The translations under genes and the position numbers were made by a program. From IMG/VR virus record IMGVR_UViG_3300013120_000738, positions 163,726 through 227,725 of that record: a stretch of DNA of 64,000 bases. One strand, written 5' to 3'. This document shows positions 53 through 63,954 of the stretch, piece by piece; the stretch's first letter is position 1, and each line of letters opens with the position of its first letter. Under the pieces are notes generated by a model. The model had not been told where the DNA came from. It was given only the letters and a program-made list of their open reading frames with translations, and did no database searches.

Positions 53-117
53 CATGCGCCGATATTCCTTTGTCACAGTGAAGTATGGTTCACTGTCTCT
101 ATCTGGAGGAATGCGTT

Positions 118-314
118 ATGCTCACGTCCACCGATGTCAAGGCCGTCCCATTGAACGAGGATGGGTGGCCGGATACAAGACATATGTGCCGGATCTTTGC
201 CGCGTCTGCAGTGCGGCTTTCTACGCTGAGAATGAGCGTAGGTTGCGGGAGATCCCCGATGAGAATCGCGAGTATCAAGCCCAGTATGCTCATGCATGTG
301 GCTATCGCGACTAG
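118..314 (+). pseudogene. Small hypothetical protein, apparently frameshifted
   Basis: GGAGG then ATG118 (MLTSTDVKAVPLNEDGWPDT); a protein-like tail (YVPDLCRVCSAAFYAENE...) continues in the -1 frame to TAG at 314. Confidence 0.45.
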
Positions 315-439
315 TAATTCCCCAATTGGAAATTTTTTGTCACAGTCTCTCTGGGAATTTCCAACTTGGAAATGCGAGTGGGGCCAAGGGTTTCATCGCC
401 CCTTGGCCCCATCCTCGCACGGCGGAGAGACTGTCTCAT

Positions 440-745
440 TTAGCCCCGCATTCGGCATCGATCCGCCATCCAATTGTTTGACGCTGCAGTAGATGTGTTC
501 GACCGTGCCATCGGGGTTTCTGATCGCGATCCGGGGATTTCCTGATTGGAAAACCCTGAAGGTGTGAGTTTGATGCCTTGATGGCCCAATTCTTTGGCCC
601 AATCGCTCAAAGCACGCGGTTGCATGCCTTCTACGGCTCTGGTGGCGGTCTCGACGGTCTCGCCGCGTTGTACGACCAGCTCCAGGACTATCAGCCGTAC
701 AAGTGAACTGTACGTGATGCTGGCGATGAGTGGCTTGTCTGCCAT
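440..745 (-). CDS. Hypothetical protein, 3' part possibly frameshifted or mosaic
   Basis: GGAGG RBS and operator upstream; last 47 nt are identical to 23337-23383. Confidence 0.5.
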   Translation of the reverse strand: MADKPLIASITYSSLVRLIVLELVVQRGETVETATRAVEGMQPRALSDWAKELGHQGIKLTPSGFSNQEIPGSRSETPMARSNTSTAASNNWMADRCRMRG

Positions 746-875
746 GGGGTGAATCCTCCCGGCGATTTCCTAGCAGGAAACGCGTATAAACAGGAGCGGG
801 GTGCCGAGGATGTGGCTGCGAGCCTATGACGCTGCCAGTCGAACCTCGACACCCCGCGAGCGGAGAGACTGATTC

Positions 876-977
876 CTATTGGAGCCACCAGGCTCCCTGC
901 GGGGTCGACGTCAAGATGAACGTGCTGAACGCTGCGGACGCGACCGCGTAGGCCAGTACAACCAAAACAAACCGCAT
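876..977 (-). CDS. 33-aa hydrophobic peptide
   Basis: MRFVLVVLAYAVASAAFSTFIL; downstream of promoter at 1066. Confidence 0.4.
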   Translation of the reverse strand: MRFVLVVLAYAVASAAFSTFILTSTPQGAWWLQ

Positions 978-1101
978 GATCTTTCTCCGCGAAGTGTGTG
1001 AAAAAATGGCCGGGTCGCGACGAGCGACCCGACCGCTCGAAAGGAGATTGACTCGTACACTATCCTGTGACGAACCGATCCACAAGGTGAAATCCGCCAG
1101 A

Positions 1102-1314
1102 TCACCGCATCGAGATGATCTCGCGGACTTGGCCGTACTCCAGGAGTGGTGGCAGCTCGTACGTGCTGCTCGAGGGACGCGGCTGGCAGTGCTGCGTCAG
1201 CTCGTCGTACGATTCCACTCCCAGATAGTAGCGAGCCGCGATGATGCACATTTTGTGCGACCAGTTCGCGTGGACTTCTCGCAGCCGGTGAACCATCTGC
1301 AAAAACGTCTCCAT
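1102..1314 (-). CDS. Hypothetical protein
   Basis: RBS and promoter at 1369. Confidence 0.55.
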   Translation of the reverse strand: METFLQMVHRLREVHANWSHKMCIIAARYYLGVESYDELTQHCQPRPSSSTYELPPLLEYGQVREIISMR

Positions 1315-60953: not shown

Positions 60954-61380
60954 CTTTCCCAGAGTTGGATATTGGTTCAAAAACTATTTCGTTTACGTCT
61001 TCAAGTTTCGCCCAAAATCGGGCTCCTTTAAATTTTTGCTGGCGGTCGGACACAGAAGTATCCTCCTCAGGCTGGTGGTGCCAACGACGGCCACCACTCT
61101 TTGAGACCTTAGCACGTTCCTTATCATTGGGGGCGAATTTGACCCAGAATGTAATGCTGTCCCACTCGCTCTTACCCTTCCGGATGTATATCCTATCCAC
61201 CTGTAAGACCGTCCCCTTCTCAAGGACTGCAAGGATTGATCTCGTATCGCCGTAACTATATGTTAATCCTGGCTGAAGCCTCGTCAGCAAGGAATCGTTG
61301 CGGCCTTCGGTGAATAGTGGGAATTCCCAATCGTCTGTCAGGCGGATTTGATGTCCAATCGATGGTACGTAGAACTTCAT
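60946..61380 (-). CDS. Hypothetical protein
   Basis: TGATG-coupled. Confidence 0.65.
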   Translation of the reverse strand: MKFYVPSIGHQIRLTDDWEFPLFTEGRNDSLLTRLQPGLTYSYGDTRSILAVLEKGTVLQVDRIYIRKGKSEWDSITFWVKFAPNDKERAKVSKSGGRRWHHQPEEDTSVSDRQQKFKGARFWAKLEDVNEIVFEPISNSGKVK

Positions 61381-61862
61381 CAGATGTCCTCCACAAAGCT
61401 TGCTATTGCAGCGTTGATTATTTCTTTGTTCTCGGTATTGAGAACGAACGGTGAATCTGCTAGATCTCGACGCGCAATATAAAATACCTCACCATCCGTG
61501 AGGAATTCGTCGTCATCTTGTGCACCAGTCCTTATTCGCCAAGGATACTCGACCTTGACGTAGAACCAGCATAATTTGTCGGGGACAACAAGATCAGCCC
61601 CCATCACATCGAATTGCGCGAACCGCTTGCCATCTTGCCTCAGAACGGCTATCGAGACCTCGGTTACGCGGAGTGTGTTACCACCGAATGTGGCATTCTG
61701 TGGTTCCCACGTAGAATTGTGGTACCTCTTGTTTTTCAGCTTCTTTAGATCTATCTGAGCGTCTGGCTGAAACTCAAGAGGTTCCTTTTTAATCGTCAGA
61801 CTCGTCGGCATCGCAATCTCCGTGGCTGCAACATTCGTCCTGGGCAGCGTCTTCGGCGGCAT
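61380..61862 (-). CDS. Hypothetical protein
   Basis: ORF in operon; start uncertain. Confidence 0.55.
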   Translation of the reverse strand: MPPKTLPRTNVAATEIAMPTSLTIKKEPLEFQPDAQIDLKKLKNKRYHNSTWEPQNATFGGNTLRVTEVSIAVLRQDGKRFAQFDVMGADLVVPDKLCWFYVKVEYPWRIRTGAQDDDEFLTDGEVFYIARRDLADSPFVLNTENKEIINAAIASFVEDI

Positions 61863-62796
61863 GTAGGACCATTTCGTCCTCTGGGCTCATGCCATTTGTC
61901 TCTTCCGCATCACCGGCAAGAGCCTTCGTGAGCATATTACCAAGGATCGATCGCTTCACGGTCTTTTGTTCATAATTGTCGGGGATATTCTTACCACCGC
62001 TGATTAGGACTTCGAGATCCATTGGAGTCTCGACGACAACGTACTCGACTTCGCCGAACATCAGTGCGACCGTCTGAATCAATTCGTCCACTTTGCCGAT
62101 CATAGCACCGAATAGCGGCGTCGGGCTCTTTGTGATCTGCTCGTAGATGTGTTTGACCTTCTTGAGGGTCAGGACTGTCGGATCGTCAGCGGGCATCAGA
62201 GTCCACATGCCGCCGTTTGTGATCGGCCGGAGAGTCATCGTGGCGTGGTCGACAATATATCCATCTTGCTTGAGGAGTCGTACGTCCATTTCGACGAGGG
62301 CTACACTTTCGCCGTGGCCTGCATGGTACAATCCGAAGTGGCCAATAATTGGCTTGTCCTCGTCCTCTTTCTCCGGTGGCTGAAACTCACTGGCGAACTC
62401 TTGAAGGGCCTCGAGAACGCTTTCGTCGTCTGGAATGCAGACAACAATTTCATCACCGTCGATCTTGCCGATGTTAATTGGTTCACCGTCTTCGATCTCG
62501 ACCTGCCACAACTTCCACTCGTCACAGTCCACATAGACATCGTGAGAGCCATCCTCGTTCGTTTTCAAGTACGTGACCTGAATTGAACTCGATAGGATTT
62601 GAAGGTCAGACAGGACTTCCACCCAGATGTTGTGGCCGTCGTTTGTTTCTTGGCAACCGGGGGCGGGTTCTCGATCGGCGTACTCTTCAAAGTACTCTTC
62701 TGGAGATCTTCCCCAATTCTTGATGAATTCTGTTCGCTTACCCGCGTCGTCGATCGCTTTGATGCACTCTTCTCGTGAGGTAGGAAGTGTCGTCAT
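61789..62796 (-). CDS. Acidic hypothetical protein (335 aa)
   Basis: Long ORF with RBS. Confidence 0.7.
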   Translation of the reverse strand: MTTLPTSREECIKAIDDAGKRTEFIKNWGRSPEEYFEEYADREPAPGCQETNDGHNIWVEVLSDLQILSSSIQVTYLKTNEDGSHDVYVDCDEWKLWQVEIEDGEPINIGKIDGDEIVVCIPDDESVLEALQEFASEFQPPEKEDEDKPIIGHFGLYHAGHGESVALVEMDVRLLKQDGYIVDHATMTLRPITNGGMWTLMPADDPTVLTLKKVKHIYEQITKSPTPLFGAMIGKVDELIQTVALMFGEVEYVVVETPMDLEVLISGGKNIPDNYEQKTVKRSILGNMLTKALAGDAEETNGMSPEDEMVLHAAEDAAQDECCSHGDCDADESDD

Positions 62797-62945
62797 TTCG
62801 TTTCCCCTGTAGGTCTTTAGTCAAGCTTGGGTGGAGGCAAGCCATCGCTCCAAGCTTGTACAGATCCCTCTTCGTGTTGATGACCATGACGACATCTTCA
62901 TCATGGCCGGTTATTAATAGCAGATCGTCCTTCAAGACAAATCCA

Positions 62946-63437
62946 CTAACTCTGGTTGGTTTCAGCGACGGAAAAAGATTCTTCGCCGCTTTCTTCGCTG
63001 CTCGCCAAATCATCGGTAAGTCCTCGTTCGACGTGGTACATCTCGGCGTCGCCGAGCGGTTGTAGTTGAATTCGGCACCCCTGCCACTTATCCATAGTCC
63101 ACAATTGGTTCTTTGTCTCAGTAAATCTGGTGATAATAATACGGAATTGGGCAGTAGGCCTGTAAAAGGCCTGATAGGCGATGCTCGCGTCTACCTCCTC
63201 GAAGAAGGTGGCACGATCGTATCGCATATTATCGAAGAGCCCTGGGAGGTCTCGGCCGGTCACCAGAGCGTATTGTTGCCATTTGAGAGTTGATGGAAGC
63301 TTTCTCATCTTATCCTCCCGCACATTTCGGGCACAAAGTTTTGCCCTGTGCTGAATTAGCGTAAGAATCACTGCATTCTGCTCCACAGCGGTCGCACAAC
63401 ACTTCATCCAAGTAAGTGGCGAAGAGATAATGGTCAA
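62946..63437 (-). CDS. Hypothetical protein
   Basis: Probable start at MRKLPSTL. Confidence 0.55.
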   Translation of the reverse strand: MTIISSPLTWMKCCATAVEQNAVILTLIQHRAKLCARNVREDKMRKLPSTLKWQQYALVTGRDLPGLFDNMRYDRATFFEEVDASIAYQAFYRPTAQFRIIITRFTETKNQLWTMDKWQGCRIQLQPLGDAEMYHVERGLTDDLASSEESGEESFSVAETNQS

Positions 63438-63837
63438 CCGGATGCGATCCCATGAAAATCGTGCCCACTACCAAACAATCAGCACCGCTGCTGACAAATT
63501 TCTCATTGTGTAAATGGACACTACCAAGTTCATCAATGTCATCCTTGACTTGCAAAGTATCAGGGCTGCAGAATGGTTCCTGTTCGTCGTCGTTGAACTG
63601 ATCTGACCAGAGTTGTTTCAAAAACGTATCTCGGCCATGGTTTTTCTCAGGGATTTCGATAATTTTTCTCCATGGTACCGGATGTTCTCGCAAATCCAGA
63701 TTGCCGACTATCCAGCTTGAGATAATTGCTCTAGGCATCCTTTCCTCCTTGATGTTCTGCAGTCTTTCTGCGTCTTTCGTCGAATTCCAGAACGCGCCGA
63801 ATCGCCTGTTCGCGGATGTGATCGGCGTAGTCATCAC
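63310..63837 (-). CDS. Hypothetical protein
   Basis: Downstream of promoter 63912; ends uncertain. Confidence 0.5.
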   Translation of the reverse strand: MMTTPITSANRRFGAFWNSTKDAERLQNIKEERMPRAIISSWIVGNLDLREHPVPWRKIIEIPEKNHGRDTFLKQLWSDQFNDDEQEPFCSPDTLQVKDDIDELGSVHLHNEKFVSSGADCLVVGTIFMGSHPVDHYLFATYLDEVLCDRCGAECSDSYANSAQGKTLCPKCAGG

Positions 63838-63954
63838 CTTGCTCTATCGCGTCTACGGCTTTCGCGATGGACTGCGGCACGCCGTGTTTCGACTGCTCTC
63901 CTACACAACACTGTTACAAAAGATATGATGGTAGTTAATTTAGTAGGAGGAATC

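What the first reader, a model, noticed from the sequence alone, without database searches (positions are those of the whole stretch)
71..63918. One promoter motif drives a modular cassette architecture
Seen: about 30 copies of ATTT[AC][AC]C-N14/15-TGT[CA]ACA, oriented with the downstream gene and mostly left of 26 kb. Many are followed by a leader hairpin (e.g. 1785-1810, 3263-3282, 3680-3711), then the operator, RBS and a 60-200-aa ORF. The geometry equals a -35, a 17-bp spacer and a TG-extended -10 (CACAnn). Inference: a phage early promoter or an uncharacterised host sigma promoter, with each gene as a portable unit.
Basis: partly seen in the sequence, partly recalled or inferred. Interest (0 to 1): 0.65.

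Follow-up and report, generated by a model that had tools for sequence, protein, structure and literature searches.

The report
Phage promoter motif in accessory island
An uncultured giant phage, probably of Planctomycetota, carries a 29-kb GC-rich island of small genes, many preceded by the same two-block promoter-like motif, which differs from the host's standard promoter and recurs in related phages that encode their own sigma factors.

Summary
The literal pattern has only 9 exact copies (0 expected). A weight matrix built from it finds 45 sites in the 227.7-kb phage record against 1.1 in shuffles. Thirty-four are in the window and 27 lie left of 26 kb. Consensus: gATTTmAC, 14 or 15 nt, TGTCACA.

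Thirty-seven of 45 sites sit 17-82 nt upstream of a same-strand Shine-Dalgarno sequence and start codon.

The sites cluster in a 55% GC island inside a 41% GC jumbo myovirus. The island holds about 61 mostly orphan small genes, three homing-endonuclease genes, and NADAR and DMP19-like genes. It is collinear with islands of related metagenomic phages that use the same motif family (TTTAmC, 14-16 nt, nGymACA).

The motif is probably not the host's housekeeping promoter. Sigma-70-type sites in the island are at chance, Pirellulales rRNA promoters are canonical, and the motif is not enriched in 201 Planctomycetota genomes.

No sigma gene lies in this 63%-complete record. Three of five related jumbo-phage records, including both near-complete ones, encode sigma-70-family factors.

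Best reading: a phage-specific promoter class of a hyperplastic accessory region, analogous to T4-type PeSL cassettes. "Every gene is a portable unit" is overstated: 25 of 61 genes have their own site. No transcript data could be obtained.

The parts
49..77 (+). promoter-like site, weak -35 (TTTTCAT), TGTCACA
   Evidence: PWM 15.1 bits. A terminator-like hairpin lies directly upstream.
1066..1093 (-). promoter-like site, ATTTCAC / CGTCACA
   Evidence: PWM 23.0. Followed by hairpin 1008-1034 plus a T-run.
1369..1396 (-). promoter-like site, divergent partner of 1467-1495
   Evidence: PWM 27.8. SD and ATG 54 nt downstream.
1467..1495 (+). promoter-like site of paralog cassette B
   Evidence: PWM 33.6. 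Cassette homology starts here.
1755..1782 (+). promoter-like site; its -35 block overlaps the stop codon of the upstream gene
   Evidence: PWM 32.3.
2426..2454 (+). promoter-like site (TGTAACA)
   Evidence: PWM 28.6. ATG 55 nt downstream.
2882..2910 (+). promoter-like site
   Evidence: PWM 26.8. ATG 44 nt downstream.
3225..3253 (+). promoter-like site
   Evidence: PWM 27.1. ATG 57 nt downstream.
3648..3676 (+). promoter-like site
   Evidence: PWM 23.5.
5223..5250 (-). promoter-like site of paralog cassette C (inverted copy)
   Evidence: PWM 35.6, the best site.
5484..5511 (-). promoter-like site
   Evidence: PWM 28.0.
5543..5570 (+). doubtful site (TGCAACA) with no gene downstream
   Evidence: PWM 17.2. 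No SD or start codon follows. Probably a chance match.
5874..5901 (-). promoter-like site
   Evidence: PWM 25.0. ATG only 20 nt downstream.
7858..7886 (-). promoter-like site of the NADAR gene
   Evidence: PWM 33.6. Leader hairpin z -2.9.
9612..9639 (-). promoter-like site of conserved gene 8677-9570
   Evidence: PWM 33.4.
10186..10214 (-). promoter-like site (TGCCACA)
   Evidence: PWM 18.7.
11383..11410 (-). promoter-like site
   Evidence: PWM 33.6.
11816..11844 (-). promoter-like site (ATTTACC)
   Evidence: PWM 17.9.
13468..13496 (-). promoter-like site
   Evidence: PWM 23.6.
14352..14379 (-). promoter-like site (GGTCACA)
   Evidence: PWM 16.3.
15561..15588 (-). promoter-like site (CGTCACA)
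   Evidence: PWM 15.7.
17255..17283 (-). promoter-like site of the DUF932 gene, conserved in orthologous position in relatives
   Evidence: PWM 25.9. Alignment of 8 orthologous upstream regions.
19056..19084 (-). promoter-like site of the helicase gene
   Evidence: PWM 17.8.
19770..19797 (-). promoter-like site
   Evidence: PWM 34.1.
22588..22616 (-). promoter-like site of the 523-aa gene
   Evidence: PWM 14.4.
24555..24582 (-). promoter-like site
   Evidence: PWM 22.9.
25864..25892 (-). promoter-like site
   Evidence: PWM 28.1.
31682..31710 (-). promoter-like site outside the island
   Evidence: PWM 29.3. ATG 32 nt downstream.
37056..37084 (-). promoter-like site (TGTAACA), followed 2 nt later by the palindrome
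   Evidence: PWM 21.4.
38556..38583 (-). weak site (TGTAATA)
   Evidence: PWM 15.6.
44182..44209 (-). promoter-like site in low-GC DNA
   Evidence: PWM 32.1. ATG 21 nt downstream.
45975..46002 (-). promoter-like site (TGTAACA)
   Evidence: PWM 19.3.
47459..47487 (-). promoter-like site (TGTAACA)
   Evidence: PWM 18.6.
63912..63940 (-). promoter-like site (TGTAACA)
   Evidence: PWM 25.8.
1784..1812 (+). leader hairpin followed by a T-run
   Evidence: -27.1 kcal/mol, z -4.0. Listed as terminator-like.
3264..3282 (+). leader hairpin
   Evidence: z -3.55 for the leader.
3678..3712 (+). leader hairpin
   Evidence: -31.6 kcal/mol, z -4.55.
7820..7857 (-). leader hairpin of the NADAR gene
   Evidence: -25 kcal/mol, z -2.9.
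17230..17243 (-). leader hairpin of the DUF932 gene
   Evidence: Orthologous leaders have a hairpin at the same relative place with different sequences; this is suggestive only.
358..372 (.). palindrome TTTCC-N5-GGAAA
538..552 (.). palindrome TTTCC-N5-GGAAA
766..780 (.). palindrome TTTCC-N5-GGAAA
2178..2192 (.). palindrome TTTCC-N5-GGAAA
2487..2501 (+). palindrome 8 nt before the ATG; its 3' arm runs into the SD
2932..2946 (+). palindrome 8 nt before the ATG
3286..3300 (+). palindrome 10 nt before the ATG
3712..3726 (+). palindrome 13 nt before the ATG
4142..4156 (.). palindrome at the end of the + strand gene block
6367..6381 (-). palindrome inside an ORF
12271..12285 (-). palindrome inside an ORF
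23659..23673 (-). palindrome 5 nt before the ATG and 881 nt from the nearest promoter site
24209..24223 (-). palindrome 16 nt before the ATG of the DMP19-like gene
27853..27867 (+). palindrome 5 nt before the ATG
28334..28348 (.). palindrome in a non-coding stretch, paired in inverted orientation with 28441
   Evidence: (I7)
28441..28455 (.). palindrome in a non-coding stretch
37039..37053 (-). the only exact palindrome copy outside the island
1570..1755 (+). 61-aa gene of the three-copy family (cassette B)
   Evidence: 74-81% identical paralogs. DNA homology runs from the -35 block to the stop codon.
4961..5155 (-). 64-aa gene of the same family (cassette C, inverted). The third copy lies 4-204 nt left of the window.
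7326..7802 (-). NADAR-domain gene
   Evidence: Pfam PF08719 5.5e-29; phrog_1017.
8214..8612 (+). HNH homing-endonuclease-like gene in a low-GC patch
   Evidence: phrog_2255 6.9e-21.
8677..9570 (-). conserved island gene of unknown function
   Evidence: phrog_4046. 50% and 42% identical in L042 and L043.
15967..17193 (-). DUF932-family gene, anchor of the island
   Evidence: 746 homologs. 14 of 15 genome hits are Planctomycetota.
17843..19009 (-). SF2 helicase gene, anchor of the island
   Evidence: ResIII and phrog_16. 59-70% identical in relatives.
20319..20987 (-). endonuclease VII / HNH-like gene in a low-GC patch
   Evidence: phrog_2633 3.1e-32.
20972..22543 (-). conserved 523-aa gene with weak GHKL ATPase hits
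23674..24192 (-). DMP19-like gene
   Evidence: Pfam PF14300 5e-11.
24608..25075 (+). HNH homing-endonuclease-like gene in a low-GC patch
   Evidence: phrog_2255 3.9e-9.
1..28700 (.). high-GC island (about 0.50-0.63 GC); it begins about 500 nt left of the window
   Evidence: Composition. 31 of 45 motif sites lie in it.

Best explanation
The motif is a promoter class: a -35-like block gATTTmAC, a spacer, and a block TG-y-m-ACA that sits where a TG-extended -10 would be. It drives short transcription units in a hyperplastic accessory region of an uncultured jumbo myovirus whose host is probably a planctomycete.

A typical unit is promoter, then often a G+C-rich leader hairpin, sometimes the palindrome TTTCC-N5-GGAAA next to the ribosome-binding site, then an SD and a small ORF.

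The holoenzyme that reads the motif does not have the host's housekeeping specificity. Most likely it is host core RNA polymerase carrying a phage-encoded sigma-70-family factor, whose gene would lie in the missing third of this record. Related phages, including both near-complete records, encode such factors.

Because the same roughly 28-nt signal recurs about once per kb, it also supplies short homologies. Promoter-plus-gene units can then be duplicated, inverted, lost or replaced, as in the PeSL cassettes of T4-type phages.

Shown: the motif, its statistics, its position and orientation, its conservation in relatives, its difference from sigma-70 consensus, one unit-wise duplication, and gene turnover between collinear anchors.

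Inferred: that it initiates transcription, which sigma reads it, the timing, and recombination at the motif.
For: Statistics: 45 sites against 1.1 in shuffles and 0 in the reversed sequence; 31 lie in the 33-kb island.

Promoter-like placement: 37 of 45 sites lie 17-82 nt upstream of a same-strand SD and start codon. The spacer takes only two values, 14 or 15 nt.

Conservation: the same two blocks precede genes in related islands.
- L042: TTTACC ... TGCCACA.
- L043/L044: TTTAAC ... yGCAACA.
- L046: TTTACC ... yGCCACA.
- The blocks sit upstream of the orthologous DUF932 gene in eight loci, while spacers differ.
- The 408-kb relative G220 has 11 pattern matches against 0 for the control.

Not housekeeping:
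- Sigma-70-type sites in window 1-20000 are at chance (9 against 9.0 +/- 3.7).
- Upstream regions of 16S rRNA in 5 of 6 Pirellulales genomes carry TTGAC(A/G), 16-17 nt, TAnnAT.
- The strict motif has 59 matches in 201 Planctomycetota genomes against 92 for the reversed control.

Sigma factors: none in this 63%-complete record. G220 (100% complete) has one hit over the family cut-off. G221 (98%) has two. G222 (70%) has one over the cut-off and one just below it. All are RpoD/RpoS-like with regions 2-4.

Modularity:
- Three 61-66-aa paralogs share DNA homology that starts at the -35 block and ends at the stop codon, and one copy is inverted.
- The island is collinear with L042, L043 and L046 through about 12 anchor genes, with lineage-specific genes between them.
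- Three homing-endonuclease genes are inserted.
Against:
- The link between the relatives' sigma factors and the motif is untested. This record has no sigma gene and no homolog of theirs.
- The motif also precedes DUF932 genes on contigs binned into bacterial genomes (L045, L061, L065; the L065 contig is 2.2 Mb). There a phage sigma would not be expected unless those are phage-derived islands, so this favours a host factor.
- The host assignment rests mainly on one gene family.
- The -10 block varies between lineages, so what is recognised is not clear.
- Several hairpins followed by T-runs lie between site and gene and would terminate the site's own transcripts unless the start falls inside the stem.
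- Only one gene family shows unit-wise duplication, and only 25 of 61 genes have their own site.
Confidence: 0.6

Rival explanations
1. These are strong early promoters read directly by the host's housekeeping sigma (SigA) holoenzyme, as with T4-type PeSL promoters. The odd -10 is compensated by the TG extension and a good -35.
For: The geometry fits sigma-70: TTmACn, 16-17 nt, TG-n-CACAnn. G at the -14 position is invariant and T at -15 is present in 39 of 45 sites. The gene content looks like an early host-takeover or anti-defence region: NADAR, DMP19-like, orphan genes. No sigma gene is in the record.
Against: The -10 hexamer CACAnn lacks the T at -12, and T at -7 is present in only about a quarter of sites. 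A sigma-70 consensus scan is at chance in the island. rRNA promoters of Pirellulales are canonical and unlike the motif. There is no enrichment in 201 Planctomycetota genomes, although exact consensus matches are rare for any natural promoter class, so this last test is weak.
Confidence: 0.15
2. The motif is read by a host alternative sigma, for example an ECF-type factor, of which planctomycetes have many. The phage and related integrated elements exploit a stress regulon.
For: The -35 block ends in AAC/CAC, as in ECF promoters. AAC, 16-17 nt, yCAC matches the spacing of the HrpL hrp box GGAACC-N15/16-CCACNNA (my recollection of that consensus, not tested here). The motif precedes DUF932 genes on contigs binned into bacterial genomes (L045, L061, L065; the L065 contig is 2.2 Mb). 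An ECF sigma gene lies 8.5 kb from one of them.
Against: There is no sign of a host regulon. The Pirellulaceae MAG has 2 matches against 5 for the control. The 201 genomes have 59 against 92. The best single genome has 9 against 2. The relatives' own sigmas are RpoD/RpoS-like, not ECF-like. The -10 block differs between phage lineages, which fits a phage-borne factor better.
Confidence: 0.15
3. The motif is not a promoter. It is a site for recombination, RNA processing, or a DNA-binding regulator, and happens to lie in intergenic DNA.
For: The boundaries of the duplicated cassettes coincide with the motif. TGTCACA is itself a 7-nt palindrome. Short perfect repeats that include the heptamer exist, such as the 26-nt inverted repeat 54-79 / 32623-32648.
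Against: The palindromic character is lost in relatives (TGCCACA, GCAACA). Two blocks with a fixed 14/15-nt spacer, strict strand agreement with genes, and placement just upstream of the SD are what a sigma-type promoter predicts. No recombinase was seen among the island proteins scanned, though not all were scanned.
Confidence: 0.07
4. The island and its motif are an assembly chimera: a high-GC phage contig joined into a low-GC one.
For: GC changes sharply at about -500 and at about 28,700.
Against: The island is internal, with 163 kb of low-GC DNA on one side and 35 kb on the other. AT-adapted copies of the same motif (TGTAACA) precede genes far outside it, for example at genome positions 3117 and 37649 and window positions 44182 and 63912. 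Low-GC endonuclease genes are inserted inside it. Relative L046 carries the island next to a tail gene 60-76% identical to this phage's.
Confidence: 0.03

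Closest known systems
PeSL cassettes (promoter-early stem-loop) of T4-type phages (Arbiol, Comeau et al. 2010, PMC2839356; Comeau et al. 2014, PMC4122927)
   Same: A repeated promoter plus G/C-rich stem-loop motif is concentrated in hyperplastic regions full of small orphan genes. The repeats are proposed as sites of homologous exchange that shuffle promoter-gene modules. Here the island has about one site per kb and G-run/C-run hairpins. One gene family is duplicated as promoter-to-stop units, and gene content turns over between collinear anchors.
   Different: PeSL promoters match the E. 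coli sigma-70 consensus; this motif does not. In PeSLs the stem-loop appears to lie upstream of the promoter (it is described as a terminator for upstream transcription); that order is my inference, whose text does not state it. Here the conspicuous hairpins are mostly downstream, in the leader. The mini-circles and promoter and terminator activity shown for PeSLs are untested here. The phage is not a T4-type coliphage.
Morons of lambdoid and other phages (gene with its own promoter and terminator inserted between neighbours; recalled from Juhala et al. 2000 and Hendrix et al. 2000, not read here)
   Same: Autonomous promoter-gene(-terminator) units of accessory function are inserted in a conserved backbone.
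   Different: Morons are single scattered insertions with unrelated host-type promoters. Here one shared motif serves dozens of adjacent genes.
Phage-encoded sigma cascades (SPO1 gp28 and gp33/34, T4 gp55, phiEco32 gp36; recalled, not tested)
   Same: A phage-specific promoter consensus unlike the host's is read by host core polymerase carrying a phage sigma. Three of five related records here, including both near-complete ones, encode sigma-70-family factors.
   Different: No sigma gene is in this record, and no link between a given sigma and the motif is shown. The consensus differs from all of those recalled.
ECF sigma promoters, e.g. the HrpL hrp box GGAACC-N15/16-CCACNNA (recalled) and ECF41/RpoE9 TGTCACA-N16-CGTC (PMC3616915)
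   Same: The -35 block ends in AAC, the downstream block is yCAC, and the AAC-to-CAC spacing is the same. The heptamer TGTCACA itself is a known ECF element.
   Different: In the ECF41 type, TGTCACA is the -35 element. Here genes start as little as 17 nt after it, so it must be the downstream element. No ECF gene was found, and no CGTC lies 16 nt downstream.

Membership tests
PeSL cassettes of T4-type phages | Motif copies concentrated in hyperplastic regions rich in small orphan genes | tested here: met
   31 of 45 sites lie in a 33-kb island. The 61 genes have a median of 92 aa. Of 30 island ORFs scanned against Pfam, only the NADAR and DMP19-like ORFs and the helicase matched a family clearly; a few others gave weak hits.
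PeSL cassettes of T4-type phages | The promoter part matches the host sigma-70 consensus | tested here: not met
   The sigma-70 scan is at chance (9 against 9.0 +/- 3.7). The consensus is gATTTmAC ... TGTCACA.
PeSL cassettes of T4-type phages | An adjacent stable stem-loop acts as terminator for upstream transcription | tested here: inconclusive
   About 13 of 31 island sites have a G+C-rich hairpin, but it lies 0-12 nt downstream of the heptamer. Some sites have a terminator-like hairpin upstream (49-77, 2882-2910). Terminator activity was not tested.
PeSL cassettes of T4-type phages | Recombination between copies produces indels, replacements and mini-circles | tested here: inconclusive
   One three-copy family has homology bounded by the -35 block and the stop codon. 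Gene turnover occurs between collinear anchors. The only near-identical genome pair available, L043/L044, is 99.9% identical without indels. Mini-circles are not testable here.
Housekeeping sigma-70 promoter | -35 TTGACA and -10 TATAAT with A at -11 and T at -7, 17 +/- 1 spacer | tested here: not met
   Spacer and -35 are compatible (TTmAC). The -10 reads CACAnn, and T at -7 occurs in about 12 of 45 sites. rRNA promoters of Pirellulales are canonical.
Housekeeping sigma-70 promoter | Extended -10 TG | tested here: met
   TG begins the heptamer in 39 of 45 sites, and G is invariant.
ECF sigma promoter | AAC in the -35 block and a CGT/GTC-type -10 about 16-17 nt downstream | tested here: inconclusive
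   The -35 block ends in AAC or CAC in most sites (ACC in five). AAC to TGTC is 14-15 nt, two short. AAC to TCAC is 16-17 nt. GTC is not conserved in relatives.
ECF sigma promoter | Cognate ECF sigma gene nearby, usually autoregulated | tested here: not met
   No Sigma70_r2, r4, r4_2 or TIGR02937 match in the 227.7-kb record. The record is only 63% complete.
Phage-sigma-dependent promoter class | The phage encodes a sigma factor | tested here: inconclusive
   Absent from this record. Present in relatives G220, G221 and G222. No homolog of these in this record.
Phage-sigma-dependent promoter class | Initiation at the motif depends on that sigma | not testable with these tools
   Needs in vitro transcription or infection transcriptomics.

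The most novel reading that the evidence does not exclude
A family of jumbo phages of Planctomycetota runs a hyperplastic, anti-defence-type gene island with its own transcription code. That code would be a phage RpoD/RpoS-like sigma with a new -10 specificity (TG-y-m-ACA) and a TTTAmC -35. A second conserved cis-element, TTTCC-N5-GGAAATCG, would sit at ribosome-binding sites and in non-coding arrays and be bound by an unknown regulator. In this phage the island would be a compositionally foreign module (55% GC in a 41% GC genome) kept expressible by sharing that code.
Probability: 0.35. Interest if true: 0.7.

Novelty: new variant of a known kind. Interest (0 to 1): 0.55.

Why it matters
Almost nothing is known about transcription signals of phages that infect Planctomycetota, or about how giant phages organise their fast-evolving accessory genes.

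Here one sharply defined non-canonical promoter class marks such a region. It is conserved across a family of uncultured jumbo phages. It is distinct from the likely host's housekeeping promoters and co-occurs with phage sigma genes in the near-complete relatives.

The motif gives a practical handle. It can be used to find accessory and anti-defence islands in related metagenomic phages, and to pair sigma factors with promoters. It also lets one test whether repeated promoters serve as recombination joints outside the T4 group.

The conserved palindrome at ribosome-binding sites points to a second, unstudied layer of control.

Tried and rejected
- Megablast of 40 kb of the window against INPHARED phages found nothing. 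tblastn of the DUF932 gene against phages found nothing. PolIII alpha finds only about 25% identical cultured-phage hits.
- The search for related loci in viral contigs found nothing with the 408-aa protein alone, the 523-aa protein, the 441-aa protein, or the 3-paralog alignment.
- Five PolIII-alpha relatives (L029-L033) are fragments without the island and have few motif copies.
- Search for a T7-type RNA polymerase: no hit, but the control also rang nowhere, so this is uninformative.
- The 3128-aa ORF was considered as an N4-like virion polymerase. It has tail-protein PHROG hits only.
- A second promoter class for the low-GC backbone was sought by k-mer enrichment. AAGATAT-type words turned out to be mostly coding and gave no motif.
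- The 225-aa, 229-aa and 297-aa conserved island proteins were tried as possible sigma or regulator candidates. No PDB sequence match was significant. The Atlas places the 225-aa protein in uncharacterised phage families.
- TGTCACA as an ECF41-type -35 element with CGTC 16 nt downstream was rejected by reading the sites. Start codons lie as close as 17 nt.
- An archaeal TATA/BRE reading, prompted by the Volactin hit, was rejected. The genome has strong SD sites, bacterial-type intrinsic terminators, DnaE and DnaB.
- The genome search on the loci L042-L046 is not possible because those records are not held.
- My first gene-calling attempts were mis-trained (needed curation). Island gene counts are therefore approximate.

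Full report
**What the window is.** The window is the last 64 kb of a 227,725-bp IMG/VR virus record. The record is linear and CheckV estimates it as 63% complete.
- The record encodes a tail sheath, a split DnaE-type PolIII alpha, NAD-dependent ligase, DnaB, an actin-like Volactin-family protein, a sulfatase and glycosyltransferases. It is an uncultured jumbo myovirus.
- It has no close cultured relative.
- Its GC content is about 0.41 throughout, except for a sharply bounded island at 0.50-0.63 GC. The island runs from about 500 nt left of the window to about window position 28,700.
- The right part of the window is ordinary low-GC phage DNA with sugar epimerases/dehydratases, a methyltransferase and a polynucleotide kinase/phosphatase.

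**The observation.**
- The literal pattern has 9 exact matches against 0 expected. TGTCACA occurs 27 times in the window and 45 times in the record.
- I built a two-block weight matrix from the 29 sites that fit T[TA][AC]AC-N14/15-TGT[CA]ACA. It finds 45 sites above 14 bits. Thirty locally shuffled genomes average 1.1, and the reversed sequence gives none.
- The 16 sites that were not used to build the matrix are the unbiased part of this excess. They add the variants CGTCACA, GGTCACA, TGCCACA and ATTTACC.
- Thirty-one sites lie in the 33-kb island and 14 in the other 195 kb. Thirty-four lie in the window and 27 of these are left of 26 kb.
- The spacer is 14 nt in 17 sites and 15 nt in 28.
- Thirty-seven of 45 sites are followed on the same strand by a Shine-Dalgarno sequence and start codon 17-82 nt after the heptamer.
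About 13 island sites have a G+C-rich hairpin beginning 0-12 nt after the heptamer.

**What the island encodes.**
- My curated calls give about 61 genes with a median of 92 aa. The count is approximate.
- Most scanned proteins have no Pfam or PHROG function.
- Exceptions are a NADAR-domain protein, a DMP19-like protein, an SF2 helicase, a weak GHKL-like 523-aa protein and a DUF932-family protein.
- From general knowledge, not tested here, NADAR and DNA-mimic proteins are plausible counter-defence functions.
- Three low-GC patches inside the island are HNH/endonuclease VII-type homing-endonuclease genes.
- Only 25 of 61 genes have a motif site within 160 nt upstream. The region is therefore a string of short operons rather than one promoter per gene.

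**Relatives and probable host.**
- The DUF932 protein has hundreds of homologs at 52-76% identity. Those that carry an organism name come from Symmachiella dynata, a Pirellulaceae MAG and an unclassified bacterium.
- In one genome per species of bacteria and archaea, 14 of the 15 loci found belong to Planctomycetota. This is the basis for the host inference. It is indirect.
- Metagenomic contigs carrying close homologs hold the same region: L042, L043/L044, L046, and the IMG/VR records G219-G223.
- The island is collinear with them through about a dozen anchor genes. These include the divergent junction at 26.5 kb, the 523-aa gene, the helicase, DUF932, 8677-9570 and the small paralog family. 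Unrelated small genes lie between the anchors.
- L046 also shares a T4-gp15-like tail gene at 60-76% identity with this phage's structural module. These are therefore true relatives, which argues against an assembly chimera.

**The motif is a family trait.**
- In L042 nearly every intergenic gap carries aTTTACC, 14-15 nt, tGCCACAg.
- L043/L044 have gaTTTAAC or TTTACC, 14-16 nt, yGCAACA.
- L046 has TTTACC or TTAACC followed by yGCCACA.
- The 408-kb relative G220 has 11 pattern matches against 0 for the control, all on one strand.
- Upstream of the orthologous DUF932 gene the two blocks are kept in eight loci while the spacers differ. G at position 2 and ACA at positions 5-7 of the heptamer are invariant.
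- This phylogenetic footprint, with the placement and the two-valued spacer, is the main reason to call it a promoter.

**Who reads it.**
- The island has no excess of sigma-70-type sites (9 against 9.0 +/- 3.7), while terminator-like hairpins are enriched (33 against 18.2 +/- 3.9).
- Upstream of 16S rRNA genes in 5 of 6 Pirellulales genomes I find TTGAC(A/G), 16-17 nt, TAnnAT and nothing motif-like. These are pattern matches, not mapped promoters.
- The strict motif occurs 59 times in 201 Planctomycetota genomes against 92 for its reversed control. It occurs 2 against 5 times in the MAG that holds a motif-led DUF932 gene.
- So it is not a host-wide signal. Exact-consensus counts are a weak test for any promoter class.
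- This record has no recognisable sigma factor and no T7-type polymerase. It is incomplete.
- G220 (100% complete) has one sigma-70-family hit over the family cut-off. G221 (98%) has two. G222 (70%) has one over the cut-off and one just below it.
- The best sigma resembles RpoS/RpoD over regions 2-4. Such sigmas have region 3.0, which reads an extended -10 TG, so the invariant G and frequent TG fit.
- None of these sigmas has a homolog in this record.
- I therefore favour a phage-encoded sigma, with host SigA and a host alternative sigma as live rivals.
- A point for a host factor: the motif also precedes DUF932 genes on contigs binned into bacterial genomes (L045, L061, L065). The L065 contig is 2.2 Mb.

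**Modularity.**
- Three paralogous 61-66-aa genes are 74-81% identical. One lies just left of the window and the others are at 1570-1755 and 4961-5155, the last one inverted.
- Their DNA homology begins at the -35 block and ends at the stop codon.
- In copy B the next promoter's -35 block overlaps the stop codon.
- Between orthologous anchors, this phage has a homing-endonuclease gene where L042 has four motif-led genes.
- Short perfect repeats are scattered through the region: a 47-nt direct repeat, a 26-nt inverted repeat containing the heptamer, and a 35-nt leader repeat.
- This fits recombination among repeated regulatory signals, as proposed for PeSLs. It is shown for one family only.

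**The 'operator'.**
- The palindrome is TTTCC-N5-GGAAA, often extended to GATTTCC...GGAAATCG. It has 17 exact copies, 16 in the island, against 0.02 expected.
- About ten copies sit 4-16 nt before a start codon, with the 3' arm running into the SD. Some of these are hundreds of nt from any promoter site.
- It is conserved in relatives: 10 copies in L043, including arrays of 3-4 in non-coding gaps, 6 in L046, 2 in L042, and 2 in the Pirellulaceae MAG island. It is oriented with the gene strand.
- The invariant stem sequence argues for recognition by a protein rather than for a mere RNA fold.
- Whether it acts on DNA (a dimeric repressor) or on RNA (an SD-masking hairpin with a translational repressor) cannot be told here.

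**Hairpins.**
- Some are followed by T-runs and look like intrinsic terminators placed between promoter and gene (1784-1812, 1008-1034, 17230-17243).
- If transcription starts 6-9 nt after the heptamer, the start falls inside the 5' arm at several sites. The hairpin would then stop only read-through from upstream. At other sites the whole hairpin lies in the leader.
- Orthologous DUF932 leaders each have a hairpin at the same relative place with different sequences. Whole-leader z-scores are weak, from -0.2 to -1.8.

Noticed in passing
window about -500 to 28,700 (genome 163.2-192.4 kb): A 29-kb island of 0.50-0.63 GC sits inside a 0.41 GC jumbo-phage genome, with sharp edges. Loci L042, L043 and L046 are 0.53-0.59 GC over the 14-21 kb held. 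Relatives G220-G222 are about 0.34-0.48 in the stretches sampled. The island may be a module exchanged between lineages of different composition.
   Followed up: partly
window 8214-8612 (+), 20319-20987 (-), 24608-25075 (+): Three HNH/endonuclease VII-type homing-endonuclease genes form low-GC patches inside the high-GC island. Two lie on the strand opposite to their neighbours.
   Followed up: yes
window 28300-29320: A non-coding stretch where the gene strand switches and GC skew flips. It holds two inverted copies of the palindrome (28334, 28441; 25-nt arms, 92% complementary), followed by G/T-rich imperfect repeats (28721-29312). In L043 the equivalent gap holds four palindrome copies. It could be an origin or another cis-acting site.
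   Followed up: partly
window 54902-54976 (-): ARAGORN calls a tRNA with anticodon TCA (reported as tRNA-SeC), which would read UGA. I did not check whether any genes carry in-frame TGA.
   Followed up: no
window 440-486 and 23337-23383; 54-79 and 32623-32648; 81-115 and 2551-2585; 12805-12864: Short perfect or near-perfect repeats: a 47-nt direct repeat (100%), a 26-nt inverted repeat (100%, includes the heptamer and roughly brackets the island), a 35-nt repeat (94%), and a tandem 30-nt duplication. They are possible traces of recent recombination or gene conversion.
   Followed up: no
window 7326-7802 (-) and 23674-24192 (-): A NADAR-domain protein and a DMP19-like (DNA-mimic family) protein. 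Both are plausible counter-defence genes in an island of orphan genes.
   Followed up: partly
window 45990-46988, 48162-49142, 57414-58418 (all -), 36024-37013 (-): The low-GC right part encodes two NAD-dependent sugar epimerase/dehydratase proteins, a SAM methyltransferase and a polynucleotide kinase/phosphatase-like protein. This suggests sugar modification and RNA or DNA end repair functions.
   Followed up: partly
relatives: G220 355,934-356,572; G221 267,753-268,385 and 208,645-209,145; G222 72,162-72,716 and 17,539-18,090 (loci L121-L125): Three related records, including both near-complete ones, encode divergent sigma-70-family factors. G220 has one hit over the family cut-off, G221 two, and G222 one over and one just below. 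The best resembles RpoS/RpoD over regions 2-4. They lie in low-GC DNA (0.34-0.45).
   Followed up: partly
L045 (Pirellulaceae MAG GCA_040219575.1, contig JAVJSD010000058.1), L061, L065: The helicase and DUF932 genes of the phage island also occur on contigs binned into planctomycete genomes. In L045 they lie next to a resolvase, a PLD-family nuclease and a large DEAD helicase. The DUF932 gene there keeps the phage-type promoter motif, and L045 has two copies of the palindrome.
   Followed up: partly
genome 70,263-75,747; 7,970-9,760; 81,950-83,479; 113,062-122,448 (outside the window): PolIII alpha is split over two ORFs: PHP plus the N-terminal part in one and the fingers and HhH in the other, with about 1.3 kb between them. 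There is also a GAF-PAS protein, a Volactin-family actin-like protein, and a 3128-aa protein with tail-protein domains.
   Followed up: no
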